Shown piece by piece: positions 10,037 to 38,154 of a DNA stretch of 64,000 nt. A model generated the notes under the pieces. The model did not search any database. It worked only from the letters and a program-made list of their open reading frames with translations, and had not been told where the DNA came from. A program made the translations under genes and the position numbers. Location: contig OZ287694.1 in assembly GCA_965649825.1 (NCBI GenBank), positions 1,239,197-1,303,196 on the forward strand, in the 5' to 3' direction. Each line of letters begins with the position of its first letter. The first letter of the stretch is position 1. The DNA is from Penicillus capitatus. Taxonomy: Eukaryota; Plantae; Chlorophyta.

Positions 10037-11463
10037 TCAGTACGATCCAGGCTTCTTTCCAAATTCACCACTAAATATGTTCGGCCCATGGCTTGGCAGG
10101 AGAACGGCGCTGGTCTGTGGACGCTTCCGGCTATGTGGACGTTGGACAACATCGGACGGCAGAAGGGGTTCCATTCTCAGATCGTCCTCTCTGAACAACG
10201 TGGAGAAGTAGGGATGACGCAGGCAGGTTTCGGCGGTTGGACGTTTGGCAGGGTCATGGATGAACATGGACTCCAACAGATCGATGGCATCGTGTGGCGT
10301 CCCTGTAAAGTAATCTCGAAGGTTCTGGCGCTTCATCACTGGAAACTCGTGCCAGTTATCGCAGCAACGAAGCGCTTTCCATTCTTCCTGCGTCGGCGTG
10401 CCGATGAGGCGGAAGATCAACATGAGCTGCTCGAACTGAGAGTGACCCGAAAAAAGTGTGACCTGCATCAGCAACAAGCAATGAGCAAAAGACATCGCTT
10501 AGAAGAAAAGCGCGGACATGTTCGTAGAGCTCCGAGAGAATACAGGCGGTACTCCAGATATCGACGGCAGGACTGTGTCCCCTATACCCCAACAGCACTT
10601 CAGGCGGGCGGTACCAAAGCGTGATGATCTGTACAGATGCATCTCTGCACGCAGCAAAGTGTGATAGTGTGAGAAGCGATACCTCTTCTGTCAGTTGTCG
10701 GATCGGCATCGAAGAGATTGAGCGCCCGAATCCAAAATCGGCAAGCTTTGCCGTGGGCCTCGCTTTGTCTGACGTGTCGAGCAAAATGTTGTGTGGCTTG
10801 AGATCTCGATGCATCAGTCCGACAGAGTGGCAGTGATGCAATCCCAACAGTATGTGATACATGATCCTCTACGCGTCCGCCATTCCACGACCCATTCAAC
10901 AACCGTCTCGCTTTTCGCTTACTCTGATCGAATCGGATGGCATCGGTCGCTCTTTCCCAGCATAGACGTGCAAATCGCAATCCAGGTGTTCAAAAATCTA
11001 TGCATACGATTGAGCGCCGATCGCTTGTAACAGCGCTCCTCACCATGTAACTCGTCGGTTGGTCTTGTCCTTTGCCCGGCTTGACGTGAACCACTTTAAG
11101 CAACCTGAGTCACGCGTTGACGGTCCATCGTGATGACACAGGCGATACGGCATCAAATGCACACGCTTGCTTACCCGACGACGTAAGGTGACTTCTTGAG
11201 CATCCTCAGCAACGACGTCTCGCGCAGAACGCACGGAGAAATGCCTTTCTCGTACTCCTACAGGCGCGATGATGGTTTGGGCGTTGACTTTGATGGTCAC
11301 TCAGGATTACGATGTGGTGTTGCTGTTTGATCGCGACATAGCGCCCCGTTGCCTTCTCGAGTGCGCGATAGACGGTGCCGTAAGTTCCTTCACCGAGGAA
11401 AGCCCGAGAGGGATCCGTGATTTCGTAGCCATCAATCGTCAGGAGGTTTTCTCGCGGCGGCAT
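10037..11463 (-). CDS. Divergent cyclin-dependent kinase (CDKA/CDKB-related)
   Basis: LGEGTYGTVYRA, VAIK, cyclin-binding helix GISPCVLRETSLL, HRDLKPHNILL, ADFGFG, IITLWYRPPEVLLG, LFSGHSQFEQL. Confidence 0.85.
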
Positions 11464-11613: not shown

Positions 11614-12886
11614 ATGCACAACGGAGACGCTGCTTTTGTTGACGAACTCTATGACGAAGCCGTCGAGCATTATACGAAAGTGTGAGGGCAGCCAAAAAAG
11701 AGTGAGAAATGCAGATAGGTTGTAACAGGCGATACAGAACGGTGTCGGCGCGGTTGGCTATGCCGCACGAGCTCAGGCTCAGCTGAAGCTCGGAAACTAC
11801 ATGGAAGCGGCAGAAGATGCGGGAAAAGCGATCGAATTGGACAATCGCATGGCGAAAGCGCACTTGCGCAAAGGGTGATGATGCTCACCCCATCTCACTC
11901 TTCCTACCGCAACAGCGTGTGATGTTTGATAGGATAGCGCTATTTCGAATGGAAGAGTTCGAAACGGCGAAGAGTTTTTTTGCCTCGGGCGCAAAGCTCG
12001 ATCCCAACAATGGTGTTTTTTCGATGTGGCTTCGCAAATGCGATGCCGAAATGGAAGGTGACCGTTTCACACTAAATGACGGACTTTTCTCACACTCTTT
12101 GGACGTTAAGAGGAAGATGCCGAAATGGAGGAGCCAGTCGCAACAGAAACGCCGCCGCCACCGCCGCCGCCCACTGCGCCCGAGACGAAACCAGAGGAAC
12201 GGAATGATCATCAAGCATTGGCGCCAAGTGCACCCCAACCCATGACACGAAAGTACAGGTAAAGTGTTGAGATCAATGTGCCTGTGTCTCGATCGGTCAC
12301 ACCTTATCTATCTAGACACCAATGGTATCAGACGCAGACACATGCATACGTCGAAGTCTTTGCCAAGAAGCTCACATCAGATCGCGTCTTGATCAAAATC
12401 GAGAAAGATCGGTTGGAGATCCGGACGAAAGAGTCCGCCGAGGATCCCAACTTCGACTACGAATTACTGCTCGATCTGAGCGAAGTGATTGTACCCGAGG
12501 AGAGTCGCTTCTCCATTCTCACCACCAAACTCGAAATCAAGCTCAAGAAAGACATGCCTGGACACAACTGGACCTCATTGGAGCACGGTAAGTCTGCAGA
12601 GGATGACGATGAGACGCTGCATTATCCAACATCTGCCAAGAAGACAATCGACTGGAGCAAATTGGAGGCGGATGTGAAGCAGGACGAAGAGAATGAGAAA
12701 GAAGAGGGCGATGCCGCCGTGCAGAAGCTCTTTCAGAAGATCTACGCCGACGCCGACGAAGACACGCGTCGCGCGATGAATAAATCTTTTCAGGAGAGCA
12801 AAGGCACTTGTCTGTCGACCAACTGGTCGGAGGTCGGGTCCAAAACGATGTCGCCGTCGCCTCCTGACGAGGCAGACAATCGATGA
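11614..12886 (+). CDS. SGT1: SGT1 co-chaperone (TPR-CS-SGS)
   Basis: TPR start (AFVDELYDEAVEHYTK), CS domain (RHQWYQT), SGS domain (GDAAVQKLFQKIYADADEDTRRAMNKSFQES...LSTNW). TGTAA at 12888-12892. Confidence 0.95.
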
Positions 12887-12982
12887 ATGTAACGCGTCGC
12901 ATTCTGTTCTGTTTCACTCGCCTCGCTGTCGTCATCGATCGCTCTATACTTTGAGCATCTAAATCGTCTTTTTGTCAACAAA

Positions 12983-15139
12983 ATGGGTCTCTCGGAGAAG
13001 GAGCCGATGACGTCTGAATCGCAAACGAGCCCCACCCAAGTGGAAGAGGTCGAAAAAGTCATCGCCAACGAAATGTTCGTCACGGTACGCGACACGCCTG
13101 AGGCTGTGAAGGAAGGAAGGCGGTTTTGGTAGAATCAAATCACGGTGGTGTGGCTGCTGCTGTCTATGACGGTGTGTTTAACATACTGGCTGCAGAAGTA
13201 TCGCATTTCGAAGGTTTTGCCGCCGTCTATTGCGGCGATGGTGCTGGGAATGTTCGTCAGCATTGTGATACGCTATCTCGGTGACCCATGAGATGCGGTC
13301 CTAAGTGTGAGGTCACACATTTTGTGGGGTTTGCAGGTCTCGCTCCTCCAAAATTCTCACCGACGGTCTTCCTCTATGGCCTGCTGCCACCCATCGTCTT
13401 CTCTGCTGGGTTCACTCTTAAGAAACGCGCATTCTTTCAGAATTTCGGAACGATTGTGACGTTTGCTGTGCTGGGCACCGTTATCTCTACCCTTGTTTTC
13501 AGTCTCTTCACACTGATGCTCATGGCGATCGGCGCCGTGGAAAAGAACAAGATCGGTGCCGATCCCGGAATCAAGATTTTCCTCTATGGTCTGAGCTGAC
13601 AGGCCGTCGTTGTGGGGACAAACCACGTGGACTGTTGTGTTAGGGTCCCTCATTTCGGCCATCGATCCCGTTGCCACGCTCTCGGTGTTTGGTGACATGG
13701 ATGCACCACCCTTGCTCTATAATCTCGTGTTTGGGGAGAGTGTGCTCAATGACGCTGTCTCCATCGTGCTTTTCAGGACGTTTGAGGGATTGCTGGGCGA
13801 AAAGATCTACTGGTGGACCATATTTCTCGTAGCAGGTGATCACGACACGCCTCTCCCCGCAGCTCTGTTCGATGTGCTCTCTGCTGCAGCGAAGTTTTGC
13901 TGGATCGGTTTGGGCTCGCTTACCGTTGGGATGGTCGTAGCGCTGATCTGTGCAGCCATCCTCAAGAATTTCAATCTCAACGGCCAGAGTACCGGGCATT
14001 CGGACGGGACCGTCTACGAAATCAGCATCGTCTTCATGACGGCTTACTTGGCCTATCTCGTACGGCCTCCATCCGTCAGCCGCTGTGTGACCGAAAGAGT
14101 GATGTCTATCTAGTTGGCTGAAGTGATCAGTCTCTCCGGCATTGTGGCACTGTTCGTCTCCGGAATTGTTCATGCGCATTACTCGTTTCACAACATCAGT
14201 GCCGATGCTCAGATCGCGATCAGCAAAGTGGCTAATGTCGTCGCTTTCATCTGCGAAATCTTTGTCTTTGAATACCTCGGAATGCAAGTGGCCCTCATTT
14301 CCATCCAGAACATCGATCCCGGAATCATTGTCTCAGGTACACACGTCTCTCCAGACGGTAGGCATGGCCTGTCGTGATCGCGGTTGCTGTCTTAGGGATC
14401 CCTCTGTGTTTGCTTTCTCGTGCCGCTAACGTGTTTCCTTTAACGTATCTGGTGAACCGATTTCGACAGTTTCCGATTCCCCATCCTGTACAGATGATGC
14501 AGTTCCTGTGCGGCCTCAGAGGTATGCGTCCAGTCCTACTGCCTGACACGACCTCACTTCCTAGAGTGTATCAGGAGCTGTGGCATATGCTCTCTCTGCA
14601 TACCTTTCCAAAATCAATCCTTCTGAATCGATCGAAGTGGGAACTCTCGTGATCGCTGTCGTCTCCACCATCCTGTTTGGCGGCGGCACCGGACCTGCCA
14701 TGCGACTACTACATCTGCAGGTTCGCTCTCACACAGCGATGTCGGCTCAGTCCGTGCACCCCTCGCTCTTTTCTCGGTTCAGGGAGCCGATGATGAAGAT
14801 GTCCATAGAATGAACTTCAGTGACGCCGCTACCAGAGGCACACGATCCACGCCCAATCGAGAAGGGATCGAAATCAACGGTCTGCTCTGGATCGTCGACT
14901 GGCTGTCCAGTTTGAACGGTACTTGTGCTGTGCACAGAAATAGAGTCGACGTGGGAGCGATTGGACAACGCCTATCTGAAGCCCTATTTCGGAGGAAGAT
15001 TGCCCAGCAGCCGCTCTGGCGGCGAAGATGCGGCTTTGCTGAGCTACTCCTCCGAAAACATGGACAGTCGAGAGTCGCCCGGCGTCTCATCTCGTCGACC
15101 TTAGTAAGTTTTTTGAGGATTGATGGATGGAGAAACTGA
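12983..15139 (+). CDS. Na+/H+ exchanger, CPA1 family (NHX/NHE)
   Basis: [73 protein letters not shown]. The 3' end is approximate. Confidence 0.92.
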
Positions 15140-15561
15140 TAAATGTGCCTGGGCGATCGGTGTTGTGTAAAAGTGTGATTTCATCGCAAGTAGAGGATGG
15201 ATGTCGTCGCGTTGACAGTGATGTGACGTTTGAGGGCGACGTCGGTGCGAAGCGCTCTGTTGTTTCAATTTCCCAAGTAAACGTTCGACAGTTTTTGGTC
15301 TCCGTGTTAATTGATTCCATCCCAACTCAAAAACGGTAAACGACCGCAAACATATCACATTGCGCGAAATGGAAACGTCGGCGGGCGTCCCGCAGGAACG
15401 GTTTCTCCTTCAGCTTCTCCAACGTCGAGCGCATCGATTTCGTCGCTGAGTATCAGCGAAAGACGCGATGCGTGTGTCGGAATGCGAAAACGTCGTCGTC
15501 TGTTGTTTCCCGCCATGTTGGTACGTTCGTTTTGACACGTCGCGGGTTGTAGTCGCTCGAG

Positions 15562-16814
15562 ATGTCGAAGAAGTCCAAAGTTGAAGAAGTTGTGAAGAAA
15601 ACGGAGAACGCAGAGACGACACCGGACACAGACACGCCCGCCTCTGGCGCTCTGTTTCCTGTCCCAAACGACTTTGAGATCACCCAGGATGGTAAGCACG
15701 GGACACGTGTGTGGCCTGACGCACGGTGACACACACGGGTGTTACAGCGACAGCCTCGGCGGCGTCGACGTATTTCTTGCCACCGACGGGCGACAGCCAA
15801 ATGGAGACGCAAGATGGACAGCAGCCGGCCGTCGTGATGAATGGACTGACACTGGAAGACCTCCGCGCAGCCATGCAGCATTTTACGCACGAGCGCGATT
15901 GGGATAAATATCACACACCACGAAACCTCCTCTGTGCACTGGTCACATCTAAAACCATGTTAAAATGTGTGACATGTGTGATGGTGGACAGGTTGGAGAG
16001 GTGGGTGAGCTGTCAGAGATCTTTCAGTGGAGAGGCGAAGTCGAGAGAGGACTGCCAGGTTAGCCTGTCCCTCTGCCTCTATCCATCATAAGCTCAACGC
16101 GTCGTAGATTTCTCAGACGAAGAGAAGAATCATGTTGCTGAAGAACTCGCCGATGTGAGCGTTGTCTTTGCAGTTTCTGTCACATAGTGTGATAAGTGTG
16201 ACCGTACTTAGGTACTGCTGTATCTCGTCCGTTTGTCCGACGTGTGTGGATTCGACCTTGCCCAAGCAGCGTACCATTGATCTTTCTTAGACGTGGTCGA
16301 TTGCTCAACACGTTGTGTCTGTAGGATCAATAAACTGCAGATAAATACGCAAAAGTACCCTCCGGAAGCTGTCCGTGGATCGCCTGCCAAATTCAACGCT
16401 TATGAATCGTCCACGCGCAGCAGTCGCCGTCACAAGTACGACATTCCTTCGTCACACCGCAAAGATGATGACGAATCCGGAAGAAAACGCGCCCGCGAGC
16501 GTTTCTCCGAAGATCAAGTCGCCGCCATGACCGAACTCGCTGAGAAAGCGGGCTGGTCGATCACGGCCCTCACTTGGGAAGAACGCATGAAGTTCTGCCA
16601 AGACTACAACATCACCAAAGAGCGCCTATGCAATTTTTTTAACAATCGGAAGCCGAAGGAAATGAAGAGAGGACGCGTTGCTTACATGCGCCGTACCACT
16701 GTGCCACATAGCTACGATCCACATCACTACGATGCCTCACACTTTCAGACAGCCACCGACGGCGACGCGCACATGCAAACGGACGAAGGATTTCTGAAGC
16801 ACATGAACGACTAG
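15562..16814 (+). CDS. dCTP pyrophosphatase (DCTPP1/MazG-like) fused to a C-terminal homeodomain, copy 1
   Basis: Manual splicing over five GT-AG introns gives ERDWDKYHTPRNLLCAL|VGEVGELSEIFQWRGEVERGLP|DFSDEEKNHVAEELAD|VLLYLVRLSDVCGFDLAQA|AINKLQINTQKYP. In the same last exon this continues into RKRARERFSEDQVAAMTELAEKAGW...FCQDYNITKERLCNFFNNRK. Confidence 0.88.
15821..15982 (+). repeat. 162-bp near-identical copy (2 mismatches) of 37644-37805, inverted orientation
   Basis: Direct sequence comparison. The tract covers about 120 nt of exon plus the first ~40 nt of the following intron. Confidence 0.92.
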
Positions 16815-17181
16815 CGCCTTGAACGCCCACTGATCGAACGCATGATATGTCAATGGACTGCTCTCCTGCAACGGACGATTGTTGTTTACTCTCTTGTTTG
16901 CCCCTTCGAACACACCGATCAACGTCGTCCCCGTTTCGCAGCGACGACGACGAGGGACATTCCCGCGATGACGTGACGTTGTTATGTTCATTCAGCGCTC
17001 GACGTCGGGTCGATTTCCGTCGTCTGTTTTGTTTCACTCGTTACGATCCGTTTCGCAGGAGATCCACCTGAACAACGTCCTGTCAAGACGCTTACTGCAG
17101 AGCCGCGTTCTTTGCGTCTTGTCCCATCACTGAGCGCTCGTCGACAGCCAATTCGACCATCCGTTGAAAGTGTTGTGCACG

Positions 17182-17701
17182 ATGGTAAGGCCAGAGAGTG
17201 ACCCTCTCTACGGCACGAGGACCTCTGGAATGGCACACGGAACAACAAGTGCCTTGTGATGGGGGCCCATACGTCTGCCGCTGTGGCGGCGGCGGCGATC
17301 TGGTCGATACTGAGAATGTGTGTCTTGCCAGCCGCTCTCCAATGATATTGACTTGCTGAACCCTCCACTTGACTTGGAGAAGTCGAAACATAAGCTCAAA
17401 CGGCTGGTGCCCACACCCAATTCATTCTTCATGGATGTCAAGTGCCCCAATTGCTTCAACATGTATGTTCGTTCGTTCGTTCGCCCGGATAGCGCATGAG
17501 GAATGACAATGCCGTGTGTGCTGCAGTACAACGATTTTCTCACATTCGCAGACAGTTGTGACCTGTTCCAGCTGTACGGGGGTCCTCTGCACACCGACCG
17601 GCGGCAAGGCGAAGCTGTCAGAAGGTAAGATGTCGCTATCTCGGGGAAAAGAGTGAGAGGGATTGGAAACAGGGAGTGCTTTTCGGAAAAAGGGAGATTG
17701 A
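17182..17701 (+). CDS. RPS27: 40S ribosomal protein S27
   Basis: ATG|intron|[12 protein letters not shown]...[23 protein letters not shown]...[15 protein letters not shown]...[13 protein letters not shown]|GSAFRKKGD*. Confidence 0.96.
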
Positions 17702-18304
17702 GGATATGGCATCGGCCTTTGAGCAACGAGCGACGTTCCTTATTTCGTTGAGTAGTCTAAGTGGACAGTGAGTGACTGCGATGCATATGGATGGATGCAG
17801 AAACAAAGAGACCAACCGCTATCTCATGGACGTTCTGTGAATCTATTCATCTGTCGGACACGGTATAGCCGATAACGCATTCGATGTCGCACACAGAACC
17901 GACAACCATTACCAATCGTATGCGGTCGAGGGAGACCACGACTGAAAAGACAGCGAAGGTGGATAGGGCAGAGAAGAGCTGTTTATGGTAAGTAAAGACC
18001 ACGAGCAACGTTCAAACCGACAGGCGCATAGCTTTCGACGAAATCTCTACGAGGCTGGGTCTCTGTTCCCAGTGACGAGCCTGAGCACTGAAAGAACGTT
18101 TTCTATGCGGAAGTTGAACGTTTCTCGTTGTCCGCGGTGTGACGCGTGAGACTCGGTATCTCGGTGGAGTGCAGGTTGTTCTGTTCTGTGTAAGCGGGAT
18201 GGTGTCGTGTTGACGCTCGCGATGTGCCGAACAGAATCTTAGCGGACGGTAACGGTCGGTTAGAGGAGAGAGGAGGACGTCACCTTCACCAACGTCACAT
18301 CATC

Positions 18305-36828: not shown

Positions 36829-38154
36829 CTACTGATTCATATGCTTGAGGAAGGCTTCCTCGTGCTGAGGTGCTCCCGAAGCCGGATACTGTGAGGTATC
36901 GTAGTGCGGATCGTAGTGCGTTGTCATTGAGGGACGGCGCAACATGGCAGCACGTCCCCTCTTCATCTCTTTGGGTTTTCGATTGTTGAAAAAATTGCAC
37001 AGACGCTCCTTCGTCACATTATAGTCCTGACAGAACTTCATGCGCTCCTCCCAAGTCAGCGCCGTGATCGACCATCCCGCTTTCTCGGCAAGTTCTGTCA
37101 TGGCCGCCACTTGATCTTCGGAGAAACGCTCGCGGGCGCGTTTTCTGCCTGTGTCTTCTTCTTGTTTGCGTGTCGTGGGGATGTCGTACTTCTGACGACG
37201 GGAACGGGCGTTATCGTAAGCAGTGTACTTAGCAGCTGACCCTCGCACTGACTCTACCGGATACTTATGTGTATTGATTTGCAGTTTGTTAATCCTAAGA
37301 GCGTCAGAGAGTGAGCACACAGCGTTCGTTATGTATGAACAGATCTTACGCTGCCTGGCCGAGGTCAAACCCACACACATCCGACAATCGTACCAGATTT
37401 AACAGTACCTAAACATCACACATCTCACTCTTCCTTCTTGGATCATATGCCTCAGCATCCCGTACATCTGCCAGTTCTTCGGCAACGTGACTCTTCTCAT
37501 CGTCTGAGAAATCTACACAGCATCACACGTGTCATGGATAACAAGGATGGAGGCAGATCGGCAAACCTGGCAGTCCCCTCTCTACTTCGCCTCTCCACTG
37601 AAAGATCTCCGACAATTCGCCCACCTCTGCCATCTGCCGTCAAATCACACATGTCACACATTTTAACGTGGTTATAGATGTGACCAGTGCACAGAGGAGG
37701 TTTCGTGGTGTGTGATATTTATCCCAATCGCGCTCGTGCGTAAAATGCTGCATGGCTGCGCGGAGGTCTTCCAGTGTCAGTCCATTCATCACGACGGCCG
37801 GCTGCGTTCCCTGGCCATCCCCTATCCATCACAGCATTCCTCAACAAAACTATTTCCCCTTTTGATGCACCTATATTAGGAATGGGCAGTGCATCCTGTA
37901 CCAAAATGGACGCATTCGACATCGGCGTCCCTTTCCATTGCCACATAAAGACAGGAGCAGGATCTTGACTTTCTACCTTCGCCTTGGGGAGGCATCGACG
38001 TGGCATATTGCGGATAGGCGTATTCGCTGGGGACAGGAAACTCTGTCGTTGCCGTCAGAAAAGCGCCAGAGGAAGGAGGCGTCCCTTCTGGCGTCTCGTC
38101 CGCATGGCTCTCCTCCTTTACCGTCGTCGCGTCGTCGTTCTTCGCTTTCGACAT
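36829..38154 (-). CDS. dCTP pyrophosphatase (DCTPP1/MazG-like) fused to a C-terminal homeodomain, copy 2
   Basis: Same intron positions in the DCTPP1 domain as copy 1: ERDWDKYHTPRNLLCAL|MAEVGELSEIFQW...|DFSDDEKSHVAEELAD|VLLNLVRLSD...|INKLQINTHKYP. Its homeodomain differs from copy 1 by a single I/V change. Confidence 0.87.
37644..37805 (-). repeat. Partner copy of the 162-bp tract at 15821-15982
   Basis: The reverse complement matches 15821-15982 with 2 mismatches, both in the intron part. Confidence 0.92.

What the first reader, a model, noticed from the sequence alone, without database searches (positions are those of the whole stretch)
15562..16814. dCTP pyrophosphatase fused to a ZF-HD-type homeodomain: a candidate nucleotide-sensing or chromatin-targeted regulator
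Seen: the spliced reading frame contains a complete DCTPP1/MazG-like domain with both metal-binding motifs (EVGE; EELAD) and the base-binding W/H/W/Y residues. The end of that domain and the homeodomain lie in one exon, so the fusion does not depend on a guessed splice. The 57-residue segment RKRARERFSEDQVAAMTELAEKAGWSITALTWEERMKFCQDYNITKERLCNFFNNRK aligns without gaps to the land-plant ZF-HD (PLINC) homeodomain as I recall it (KR.R..F..EQ...M..FAE..GW............FC.........L.....N.K). It keeps Asn51 but has Phe in place of Trp48, and there is no zinc finger. Known: DCTPP1 enzymes are oligomeric and hydrolyse dCTP and modified dCTPs such as 5-methyl-dCTP; ZF-HD factors are considered a streptophyte family. 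Inference: the enzyme domain could oligomerise the DNA-binding domains, sense dNTP pools, or sanitise nucleotides at chromatin. I know of no described protein with this architecture.
Basis: partly seen in the sequence, partly recalled or inferred. Interest (0 to 1): 0.88.

Follow-up and report, generated by a model that had tools for sequence, protein, structure and literature searches.

The report
dCTPase fused to plant-type homeodomain
A green-seaweed gene joins a nucleotide-cleaning enzyme (dCTP pyrophosphatase) to a DNA-binding homeodomain whose closest relatives are land-plant ZF-HD factors; the fusion is real and conserved across many green algae, has never been studied, and may link DNA-building-block pools to gene control.

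Summary
Window 15562-16814 (+) holds a six-exon gene with five GT..AG introns of 49-57 nt. It encodes 328 aa: a DCTPP1-type MazG domain (residues 77-189), a disordered linker, and a homeodomain (219-280).

The splice model is supported by an intron-less contig from a relative. It is also supported by an 86%-identical collinear locus where 55 of 60 exon differences fall at third codon positions.

The MazG part aligns without gaps to mouse dCTPase (E 9e-33) and keeps all metal-binding residues. The homeodomain matches the ZF-HD model TIGR01565 end to end (E about 1e-9), but below its curated cut-off. Its best solved relatives are the two Arabidopsis ZF-HD domains. It has no zinc finger and has Phe, not Met, at position 49. 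It is therefore ZF-HD-like, not a ZF-HD member.

The architecture is not unique. It occurs in Bryopsidales, Trebouxiophyceae, Chlorophyceae and Tetraselmis, mostly labelled "hypothetical". A second paralogue lies in this window (36829-38154, -). I found no paper on it.

The likely function is an oligomeric DNA-binding regulator that keeps a working nucleotide site. Function is inferred, not shown.

The parts
15562..16814 (+). Paralogue 1: the complete MazG-homeodomain gene (ATG to stop). Exons are 15562-15691, 15748-15941, 15992-16058, 16108-16154, 16212-16270 and 16325-16814. It encodes 328 aa.
   Evidence: Splice model. An intron-less contig of a relative is collinear with the exons. In the orthologous locus, exon differences fall at codon positions [4, 1, 55] and exons have no indels.
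15562..15845 (+). N-terminal region, residues 1-76 (spans intron 1). Predicted disordered. It contains the short conserved 'SGALF/SGAFL' motif.
   Evidence: AlphaFold2 pLDDT is below 50 for residues 1-74.
15846..16394 (+). DCTPP1-type all-alpha MazG domain, residues 77-189 (spans introns 2-5). Metal-binding residues are E111, E114, E117, E143 and D146. Pocket residues are W95, H99, N103, W121 and Y150. The RGSxxK(F/Y) tail is also present.
   Evidence: Pfam MazG-like scores 30.4 bits (cut-off 27) and MazG 27.2 bits (cut-off 22). Mouse dCTPase aligns without gaps at E 9.4e-33. Foldseek matches 6sqz/7mu5 with TM 0.83-0.85 and rmsd 2.1-2.4 A.
16395..16481 (+). Linker, residues 190-218. Predicted disordered, with the conserved 'KYDIP' and acidic 'EE(E/D)(S/T)G' motifs.
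   Evidence: pLDDT is below 50 for residues 190-216.
16482..16667 (+). ZF-HD-like homeodomain, residues 219-280. It has an N-terminal arm RKRARERF, three helices, and the recognition helix ERLCNFFNNRKPK (F48, F49, N50, N51, K53, P54).
   Evidence: TIGR01565 matches at E 1.6e-9 to 2.7e-10 over the full model. PDB top hits are 1wh5 and 1wh7, both gapless. AlphaFold2 pLDDT is 94-96, and all top Foldseek hits are homeodomains.
16668..16814 (+). C-terminal tail, residues 281-328, plus the stop codon. Predicted disordered. It ends in the motif FLKHMN(D/E/Q), conserved in the Caulerpa-related lineage.
36829..38154 (-). Paralogue 2: a second MazG-homeodomain gene with the same five intron positions, about 317 aa. 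Its protein is 74% identical to paralogue 1. The homeodomain (37149-36952) differs from paralogue 1 by one residue. The pocket Tyr is replaced by Asn (EELADVLLNL). The intron 1 boundary is ambiguous.
   Evidence: tblastn, gene model, identities, Pfam MazG-like, coordinates.
15821..15951 (+). A 131-nt tract perfectly identical to paralogue 2 (37805-37675). It crosses the exon 2/intron 2 boundary. This is a probable gene-conversion tract between the paralogues.

Best explanation
SHOWN. This is a real, selectively maintained gene of a bryopsidalean (Caulerpa-related) green alga. One polypeptide carries two folded domains joined by a flexible linker. The first is a DCTPP1-type dCTP pyrophosphatase domain with every metal-binding residue intact. 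The second is a three-helix homeodomain whose closest known class is the plant ZF-HD/PLINC homeodomain.

INFERRED MECHANISM.
- Oligomerisation. The MazG domain assembles into the DCTPP1-type oligomer (a tetramer in the mammalian enzymes; established knowledge). It thereby presents several homeodomains on flexible linkers. It would play the role that the dimerising zinc finger plays in streptophyte ZF-HD proteins.
- DNA binding. The homeodomains bind DNA through the conserved Arg5 arm and the N47/N50/N51 recognition helix. By analogy with other Asn51 homeodomains, an AT-containing core is likely. This would make the protein a multivalent nuclear DNA-binding regulator.
- Enzyme activity. The active site is conserved in most members, so the protein probably still binds and hydrolyses dCTP-type nucleotides, including modified forms such as 5-methyl-dCTP.
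- Coupling. Substrate occupancy could then modulate DNA binding, because the RGSxxKY segment that follows the last MazG helix leads directly into the linker. Alternatively, the enzyme could simply act while tethered to chromatin. This coupling is the most speculative step.

Evolution. The homeodomain type predates the split of chlorophytes and streptophytes, or was exchanged early. It was combined with different oligomerisation partners in the two lineages.
For: Gene reality:
- Splice model.
- Intron-less orthologous contig.
- Third-position bias [4, 1, 55] and indel-free exons against a collinear relative.
- Single transcripts carrying both domains in MMETSP, Trinity and Logan assemblies of other chlorophytes.

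Enzyme domain:
- Pfam scores above the gathering cut-offs.
- E 9.4e-33 and a gapless alignment to mouse dCTPase, with EVGE and EELxD kept.
- Foldseek TM 0.83-0.85 to mouse and human DCTPP1.
- E143, D146, W95, H99, N103 and W121 are invariant, and E111 and E114 are at least 90% conserved, across 19 fusion proteins.

Homeodomain:
- TIGR01565 matches in 17 of 17 members, best E 6.5e-12.
- PDB top hits are 1wh5 and 1wh7.
- A reverse profile search of 1.8 billion proteins recovers bona fide ZF-HD proteins, and I saw no other named homeodomain class among the 28 hit sequences I read. One example is Selaginella 'zinc-finger homeodomain protein 2', which has Pfam ZF-HD_dimer.
- R5, F8, N51, R52 and K53 are invariant.
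- pLDDT is 94-96, with a homeodomain fold.

Regulator reading:
- Paralogues in Tetraselmis, and a Symbiochloris protein, keep the homeodomain while the catalytic motifs have decayed. The MazG fold therefore has a role beyond catalysis.

Recurrent theme:
- Liverworts fuse DCTPP1 to a Myb/SANT DNA-binding domain.

DCTPP1 and 5-methyl-dCTP:
- PMC4491611.
Against: - No functional data exist for any member.
- The homeodomain fails the Pfam Homeodomain gathering score in this protein (12.2-17.5 bits against 22.9). It also fails the TIGR01565 cut-off.
- Trp48 is replaced by Phe. An invariant Pro at position 54 shortens the predicted recognition helix. Sequence-specific binding is therefore not certain.
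- The oligomeric state was not modelled.
- AlphaFold2 gives no fixed arrangement between the domains (pTM 0.35). Allosteric coupling therefore has no structural support.
- Caulerpa showed no stand-alone DCTPP1 among the top hits. This fits a plain housekeeping enzyme with an appended tether as well as it fits a regulator.
Confidence: 0.6

Rival explanations
1. Chromatin- or nucleus-targeted housekeeping dCTPase. The enzyme is the function: it cleans dCTP, 5-methyl-dCTP or halogenated dCTP near replicating DNA. The homeodomain, with its basic flanks, serves only as a nuclear-localisation and non-specific DNA tether, and regulates nothing.
For: Catalytic residues are intact and conserved. No stand-alone DCTPP1 from Caulerpa appeared among the top 120 hits, so the fusion may be the only DCTPP1 in Bryopsidales. 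Chlorella DCTPP1 has a plain basic tail where the homeodomain would sit. Liverworts tether the same enzyme to a different DNA-binding domain.
Against: The recognition-helix residues (NFFNNRKP) are invariant across classes of green algae. That is stronger conservation than a non-specific tether or an NLS would need. Tetraselmis and Symbiochloris proteins keep the homeodomain after losing the catalytic motifs.
Confidence: 0.25
2. Transcription factor with a pseudo-enzyme. The MazG fold is only an oligomerisation, or at most a ligand-binding, module and no longer turns over nucleotides.
For: Catalytic motifs are degenerate in the Tetraselmis proteins and in Symbiochloris. Ostreobium has RDVGQL in place of GEVGEL. 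Paralogue 2 here and Caulerpa g7601 have replaced the pocket Tyr with Asn or His.
Against: In paralogue 1 and most orthologues every metal ligand and pocket residue of mouse dCTPase is kept. Against the close relative the MazG domain (residues 77-189) shows a single conservative change, E135D, and the helices are unchanged. This argues for a retained active site.
Confidence: 0.12
3. Artefact. Either two neighbouring genes have been merged by a wrong model, or a chance homeodomain-like stretch lies in a 3' region that is not translated.
For: None found. No transcript data from this organism itself were available.
Against: The last MazG helix and the homeodomain share one exon and one ORF. A relative's intron-less contig has one ORF covering both. 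Third-position bias extends through the homeodomain exon. The architecture recurs in at least four green-algal classes and in transcriptomes.
Confidence: 0.02

Closest known systems
DCTPP1 / RS21-C6 (mammalian dCTP pyrophosphatase 1, all-alpha MazG-like NTP pyrophosphatase; PDB 2a3q, 2oig, 6sqw, 7mu5)
   Same: About 50% identity with a gapless alignment. The EXXE...EXXD metal motifs, the pocket Trp/His/Asn/Trp/Tyr and the RGSxxKY tail are the same. The fold is the same, with TM 0.83-0.85.
   Different: The algal protein carries a 76-residue disordered N-terminus and a C-terminal linker plus homeodomain, which mammalian and most plant DCTPP1 lack. Activity and oligomeric state are untested.
ZF-HD / PLINC homeodomain transcription factors of streptophytes (Arabidopsis ZHD proteins, PDB 1wh5 and 1wh7; TIGR01565)
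   Same: The homeodomain length and loop spacing are the same, with a gapless alignment. Shared signature residues are R5, F8, the A-E-x-x-G/N-W motif after helix 1, the Cys in helix 2, L before helix 3, and N51. The algal profile retrieves true ZF-HD proteins from 1.8 billion sequences.
   Different: There is no ZF-HD_dimer zinc finger. Position 49 is Phe, not the class-diagnostic Met, and position 48 is Phe, not Trp. Pro54 is invariant. The score is below the TIGR01565 cut-off. The partner domain is an enzyme placed N-terminal to the homeodomain. The lineage is Chlorophyta, where PLINC is reported absent (PMC2775110).
Liverwort Myb/SANT-like + DCTPP1 fusions (Marchantia, Riccia and Calypogeia predicted proteins)
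   Same: The same enzyme family is joined in one protein to a DNA-binding domain, and the fusion is conserved within a plant lineage.
   Different: The DNA-binding domain is different (Myb_DNA-bind_4/MADF) and sits on the N-terminal side. This is an independent fusion event. It is also uncharacterised.
Bacterial NrdR (functional analogy only, from general knowledge)
   Same: A nucleotide-binding module is joined to a DNA-binding module, so that (deoxy)nucleotide levels can set transcription.
   Different: The folds are unrelated (ATP-cone plus zinc ribbon) and it is prokaryotic. No evidence yet shows that the algal protein regulates nucleotide-metabolism genes.

Membership tests
DCTPP1 / MazG-like all-alpha NTP pyrophosphatase | Profile match above the curated threshold (Pfam PF12643 / PF03819) | tested here: met
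   PF12643 scores 30.4 bits (cut-off 27) and PF03819 scores 27.2 bits (cut-off 22). Paralogue 2 also passes.
DCTPP1 / MazG-like all-alpha NTP pyrophosphatase | Metal-binding EXXE ... EXXD motifs and the nucleobase-pocket residues of mouse dCTPase | tested here: met
   The alignment to 2a3q/6sqw is gapless. E111, E114, E117, E143 and D146 correspond to mouse E63, E66, E69, E95 and D98. W95, H99, N103, W121 and Y150 correspond to W47, H51, N55, W73 and Y102. The assignment of roles to these residues comes from knowledge of the family.
DCTPP1 / MazG-like all-alpha NTP pyrophosphatase | Four-helix all-alpha fold | tested here: met
   AlphaFold2 pLDDT is about 90 over residues 101-180. Foldseek matches 6sqz_D and 7mu5 with TM 0.83-0.85 and rmsd 2.1-2.4 A.
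DCTPP1 / MazG-like all-alpha NTP pyrophosphatase | Homo-oligomer (tetramer) and dCTP / 5-methyl-dCTP hydrolysis | not testable with these tools
   This needs SEC-MALS and enzyme assays.
Homeodomain superfamily | Pfam PF00046 match above the gathering score | tested here: not met
   The window protein scores 12.2-17.5 bits against 22.9. All 17 family members match at E of 1 or less, with best E 1.7e-6.
Homeodomain superfamily | Three-helix fold with an N-terminal arm, plus the conserved residues R5, F8, F49, N51 and R/K53 | tested here: met
   The helices are predicted with pLDDT 90-96. The top 50 PDB neighbours are all homeodomains, with rmsd 1.3 A over 52 columns. R5, F8, F49, N51, R52 and K53 are invariant. 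W48 is replaced by F.
ZF-HD / PLINC class | ZF-HD dimerisation zinc finger upstream of the homeodomain (Pfam PF04770; CxxCxCHxxxH) | tested here: not met
   Pfam finds no match. The protein has only four Cys, and none forms such a motif. As a positive control, Selaginella P0164 scores 83.9 bits.
ZF-HD / PLINC class | Homeodomain matches TIGR01565 above the curated cut-off | tested here: not met
   The score is 35.7-40 bits against 57.45. The match is nevertheless full-length, 1-57 of 58, at E 6e-9 to 2.7e-10.
ZF-HD / PLINC class | [quoted passage not shown] | tested here: met
   The alignment to 1wh5 and 1wh7 is gapless. Against Pax6, goosecoid and other homeodomains there is a 4-residue gap.
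ZF-HD / PLINC class | Met at homeodomain position 49 (PMC2775110) | tested here: not met
   Phe is invariant at position 49 in all algal members.

The most novel reading that the evidence does not exclude
The protein is a eukaryotic transcription factor that reads the deoxynucleotide pool directly. Occupancy or turnover of dCTP or 5-methyl-dCTP in the tetrameric MazG core would change how its four ZF-HD-like homeodomains engage DNA. It would also be the chlorophyte counterpart of the ancestor of the land-plant ZF-HD family. That would mean the PLINC-type homeodomain arose before the chlorophyte/streptophyte split and later swapped an enzyme for a zinc finger as its oligomerisation partner.
Probability: 0.15. 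Interest if true: 0.85.

Novelty: new variant of a known kind. Interest (0 to 1): 0.62.

Why it matters
Both domains are well known, but the combination has not been described or studied.

For plant evolution, it places a ZF-HD/PLINC-like homeodomain in Chlorophyta. The literature reports the class there as absent and dates its origin to streptophytes. It also suggests that the same homeodomain type was paired with two different oligomerising partners.

For nucleotide metabolism and epigenetics, it offers a natural experiment. A dCTP/5-methyl-dCTP-hydrolysing enzyme is physically tied to DNA. Enzyme-dead paralogues in Tetraselmis, and an independent Myb-DCTPP1 fusion in liverworts, point to a recurring advantage of that link.

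The question is directly testable with recombinant protein.

Tried and rejected
- Merged-gene or read-through artefact: rejected.
- Minus-strand ORFs overlapping the locus (15453-15914 and 16639-17037): rejected. The third-position bias fits the + strand frame.
- Foldseek on the isolated homeodomain model did not separate ZF-HD from other homeodomains. 1wh5 ranked 28th, although it had the highest identity, 26%. Fold alone cannot assign the class.
- The word-indexed homologue search with the homeodomain-only profile returned only short ORF fragments. It was uninformative about distribution.
- Some long multi-stretch hits of the homeodomain profile are repeat proteins, and P0133 carries repeated HTH-like units. 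P0133, P0156 and P0186 are not homeodomain relatives and I set them aside; P0124, P0154 and P0171 show the same multi-stretch pattern but I did not read them.
- A search for a named Chlamydomonas reinhardtii or Volvox orthologue, starting from the Polytomella protein, found none. Only stand-alone DCTPP1 was seen in volvocine algae. Presence in the main model alga is unresolved.
- Literature searches found nothing relevant for dCTP pyrophosphatase + homeobox + green algae, MazG + homeodomain + fusion, or DCTPP1 + Chlamydomonas. The Caulerpa genome paper discusses only TALE homeobox genes.
- Species identity was not established. The nearest named proteins are the two Caulerpa lentillifera paralogues. 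Halimeda, a polyploid with subgenomes (PMC11441479), is a possibility only.
Full report
**1. What is at the locus**

Window 15562-16814 on the + strand holds a six-exon gene. The exons are 15562-15691, 15748-15941, 15992-16058, 16108-16154, 16212-16270 and 16325-16814. The five introns are 49-57 nt long, and all are GT..AG. The spliced CDS is 987 nt and encodes 328 aa. The last exon is also a plain 173-codon ORF. It contains the final MazG helix (INKLQINTQKYP), the linker and the homeodomain.

**2. Is the gene model real?**

Two independent comparisons say yes.

- Contig L001 (JGI sample 3300008031, 1401 nt) carries an uninterrupted 329-aa ORF, P0001, which is 78% identical. Its nucleotides are collinear with the window's exons. 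All five introns are missing exactly at the predicted junctions. For example, window 16154|16212 corresponds to L001 611|612, and 16270|16325 to 670|671.
- Contig L003 (ENA ERZ26696514, a 1.36-Mb contig) is 86% identical and collinear with window 12561-18246. I projected the exon model onto it.
  - This gives a 987-nt ORF with no indel in any exon.
  - The 60 substitutions are distributed over codon positions as [4, 1, 55].
  - Only 6 amino-acid changes result, none in the homeodomain and only E135D within the MazG domain (residues 77-189).
  - The introns are 57-88% identical, and four of the five carry indels.
  - The donor and acceptor dinucleotides are kept.

This is strong purifying selection over the whole reading frame. 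Minus-strand ORFs over the locus are not supported.

**3. The enzyme half**

- Pfam MazG-like (30.4 bits, cut-off 27) and MazG (27.2 bits, cut-off 22) both pass.
- Residues 77-198 align without a gap to mouse dCTPase (2a3q/6sqw) at E 9.4e-33, and to human DCTPP1 (7mu5) at 1.2e-28.
- In mouse numbering, W47, H51, N55, E63, E66, E69, W73, E95, D98 and Y102 are all identical. They correspond to W95, H99, N103, E111, E114, E117, W121, E143, D146 and Y150 here. The RGSxxK(Y/F) tail is also kept.
- AlphaFold2 models the domain with pLDDT around 90. Foldseek places it on mouse and human dCTPase, with TM 0.83-0.85, rmsd 2.1-2.4 A and about 50% identity.

**4. The DNA-binding half**

*Profile matches.*
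- Residues 219-275 match NCBIfam TIGR01565 (homeobox domain, ZF-HD class) over model positions 1-57 of 58. The E-value is 6e-9 for the whole protein and 2.7e-10 for the isolated segment. The score, 36-40 bits, is below the curated cut-off of 57.45.
- The general Pfam Homeodomain model matches only weakly, at 12-17.5 bits against a cut-off of 22.9.

*Solved structures.* A profile of 17 algal homeodomains (A2) was searched against all PDB sequences.
- The two Arabidopsis ZF-HD domains come first: 1wh5 at E 3.1e-7 and 1wh7 at E 1.6e-4. Both align without a gap.
- Every other homeodomain scores E of 0.025 or worse and needs a 4-residue gap between helices 1 and 2.

*Reverse search.* The same profile was searched against 1.84 billion representative proteins and gave only 81 hits at E of 0.001 or better.
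- The strong hits are the same fusion family.
- The weaker hits include bona fide ZF-HD proteins with the CxxCxCHxxxH finger. Named examples are Selaginella 'zinc-finger homeodomain protein 2', Cryptomeria and Diphasiastrum proteins. For the Selaginella protein, Pfam confirms ZF-HD_dimer plus Homeodomain.
- I saw no HD-ZIP, WOX, KNOX, BEL or animal class among the 28 hit sequences I read.
- Three multi-stretch hits that I read (P0133, P0156, P0186) are repeat proteins and were set aside; three more with the same pattern were not read.

*Structure.* AlphaFold2 gives three helices at pLDDT 90-96. All of the top 50 PDB neighbours are homeodomains. The fold search does not discriminate between classes.

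*Features that differ from ZF-HD.*
- There is no zinc finger. Pfam finds no PF04770 match, and the protein has only four Cys.
- Phe, not Met, stands at position 49. Phe, not Trp, stands at position 48.
- An invariant Pro at position 54 ends the predicted recognition helix early.

Mukherjee et al. (PMC2775110) name the finger, M49 and the helix 1-2 insertion as diagnostic of PLINC. Only the insertion is met here. The correct label is 'ZF-HD-like homeodomain', not a ZF-HD family member.

**5. Distribution**

The architecture is widespread in core Chlorophyta. Proteins with both domains come from the following groups.

| Group | Examples |
|---|---|
| Bryopsidales | Caulerpa lentillifera (two paralogues, g5111 and g7601), Bryopsis sp. 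KO-2023, Ostreobium quekettii |
| Trebouxiophyceae | Myrmecia bisecta, two Trebouxia species, Symbiochloris |
| Chlorophyceae | Polytomella parva, Chlamydomonas eustigma |
| Chlorodendrophyceae | Tetraselmis |

- Several of these are transcriptome contigs (MMETSP, Trinity, Logan). A single mRNA covering both domains is therefore documented in other species.
- Across 19 proteins the invariant columns include the catalytic residues E143 and D146, the pocket residues, and R-x-R-F ... W-S ... NFFNNRKP in the homeodomain.
- Bryopsis shares four intron positions within the MazG domain with this gene.
- Public names are automatic: 'hypothetical protein', 'Homeobox domain-containing protein', 'dCTP diphosphatase'.
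- Chlorellales and volvocine algae show DCTPP1 without the homeodomain. I could not find a named Chlamydomonas reinhardtii orthologue.
- Literature searches found no description of the fusion. PLINC is reported absent from Chlorophyta and is dated to the streptophyte ancestor (PMC2775110, PMC7027972).

**6. A second copy in the window**

tblastn of the protein against the window found a paralogue on the minus strand at 38154-36829.
- It has the same five intron positions and encodes about 317 aa. The intron 1 boundary is ambiguous.
- The protein is 74% identical to paralogue 1, and the homeodomain differs by one residue.
- Its pocket Tyr is Asn (EELADVLLNL). Caulerpa g7601 has His at this position.
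- A 131-nt tract (15821-15951 = 37805-37675) is perfectly identical between the copies and crosses the exon 2/intron 2 boundary. The flanks are 50-80% identical. This pattern indicates gene conversion.

**7. How it most likely works**

*Shown:* two folded domains with disordered N-terminus, linker and tail; an intact active site; and conserved DNA-contact residues.

*Inferred:*
- The MazG domain oligomerises as DCTPP1 does. Mammalian DCTPP1 is a tetramer (family knowledge). It would present several homeodomains, taking the place of the dimerising zinc finger of ZF-HD proteins.
- The homeodomains bind DNA.
- The nucleotide site stays functional.

Two observations bear on the balance between enzyme and regulator.
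- Tetraselmis proteins and a Symbiochloris protein keep the homeodomain while EVGE and EELxD have decayed, for example to NSGE and EHLAQ. Ostreobium has RDVGQL. The MazG fold therefore has a role apart from catalysis.
- In most lineages, including paralogue 1 here, all catalytic residues are invariant. Activity or at least ligand binding is therefore normally selected.

Coupling of nucleotide occupancy to DNA binding is plausible, because the conserved RGSxxKY segment leads straight into the linker. It has no direct support, and pTM 0.35 shows no fixed inter-domain geometry.

The main rival is a chromatin-tethered housekeeping dCTPase. Two findings support it: no stand-alone DCTPP1 from Caulerpa appeared among the hits, and liverworts independently fuse DCTPP1 to a Myb/SANT domain. 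DCTPP1's link to 5-methyl-dCTP and genome methylation is documented in human cells (PMC4491611).

**8. Verdict**

The fusion is real, and the ZF-HD-like affinity is real, but formal ZF-HD membership fails. The architecture is common in green algae and is not unique to this genome. Function is untested.
- Novelty: a new variant of known kinds. It is an undescribed but conserved domain combination.
- Interest is moderate to high. It relocates a supposedly streptophyte-type homeodomain into Chlorophyta. It also offers a testable candidate for a nucleotide-linked DNA-binding protein.

**9. Context**

- The upstream neighbour is an SGT1-like gene with CS and SGS domains (12278-12886 +).
- The downstream neighbour is ribosomal protein S27e, from about 17320 (+).
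- The organism is a bryopsidalean green alga nearer to Caulerpa than to Bryopsis or Ostreobium. The species was not determined.

Noticed in passing
window 36829-38154 (-): A second MazG-homeodomain paralogue lies 21 kb from the first, on the opposite strand. It has the same intron positions. Caulerpa lentillifera likewise has two (g5111 and g7601).
   Followed up: yes
window 15821-15951 (+) and 37675-37805 (-): A 131-nt tract is perfectly identical between the two paralogues and crosses an exon/intron boundary. The surrounding sequence is 50-80% identical. This is a likely recent gene-conversion tract.
   Followed up: partly
window about 37400 (-), paralogue 2 motif EELADVLLNL; also Caulerpa P0003 and P0005: The nucleobase-pocket Tyr (mouse Y102) is Asn in paralogue 2 and His in Caulerpa g7601. 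One paralogue lineage may have altered or lost substrate binding.
   Followed up: partly
proteins P0122, P0125, P0127 and P0155 (Tetraselmis, Symbiochloris, one unnamed): These are MazG-like + homeodomain proteins in which the EVGE and EELxD catalytic motifs are degenerate but the homeodomain is intact. They look like pseudo-enzyme versions of the family.
   Followed up: partly
proteins P0102, P0104, P0077, P0092 and P0068 (Marchantia, Riccia, Calypogeia): Liverworts carry an independent fusion of DCTPP1 to an N-terminal Myb/SANT-like (Myb_DNA-bind_4/MADF) DNA-binding domain. Pfam confirms this for P0102.
   Followed up: partly
proteins P0164, P0172 and P0189 (Selaginella, Cryptomeria, Diphasiastrum): A divergent set of vascular-plant ZF-HD proteins keeps Phe49 or Arg52-type residues (YWFHNRK, YWLYNTRQK). 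They are the ZF-HDs most like the algal homeodomain and may be an intermediate sequence type.
   Followed up: no
proteins P0004, P0005, P0130 and P0145 (relatives' genomic ORF calls): In several relatives the ORF call runs on into non-homologous sequence right after 'ITK' inside the homeodomain. This implies an intron at that point. The window genes have no intron there.
   Followed up: no
window 12278-12886 (+) and about 17320-17700 (+): The neighbours are an SGT1-like gene (CS + SGS domains) upstream and ribosomal protein S27e (split by introns) downstream.
   Followed up: partly
L003 5762-6606; window beyond 18246: Collinearity with the 86%-identical relative ends at window 18246. The relative has a reverse-transcriptase (RVT_1) ORF just beyond, which suggests a retroelement difference between the two genomes.
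   Followed up: no
window 10037-10862 (-): ORFs here carry protein-kinase motifs (HRDLKPHNILL, WYRPPEVLLG). They resemble a CDK-like kinase split by introns.
   Followed up: no
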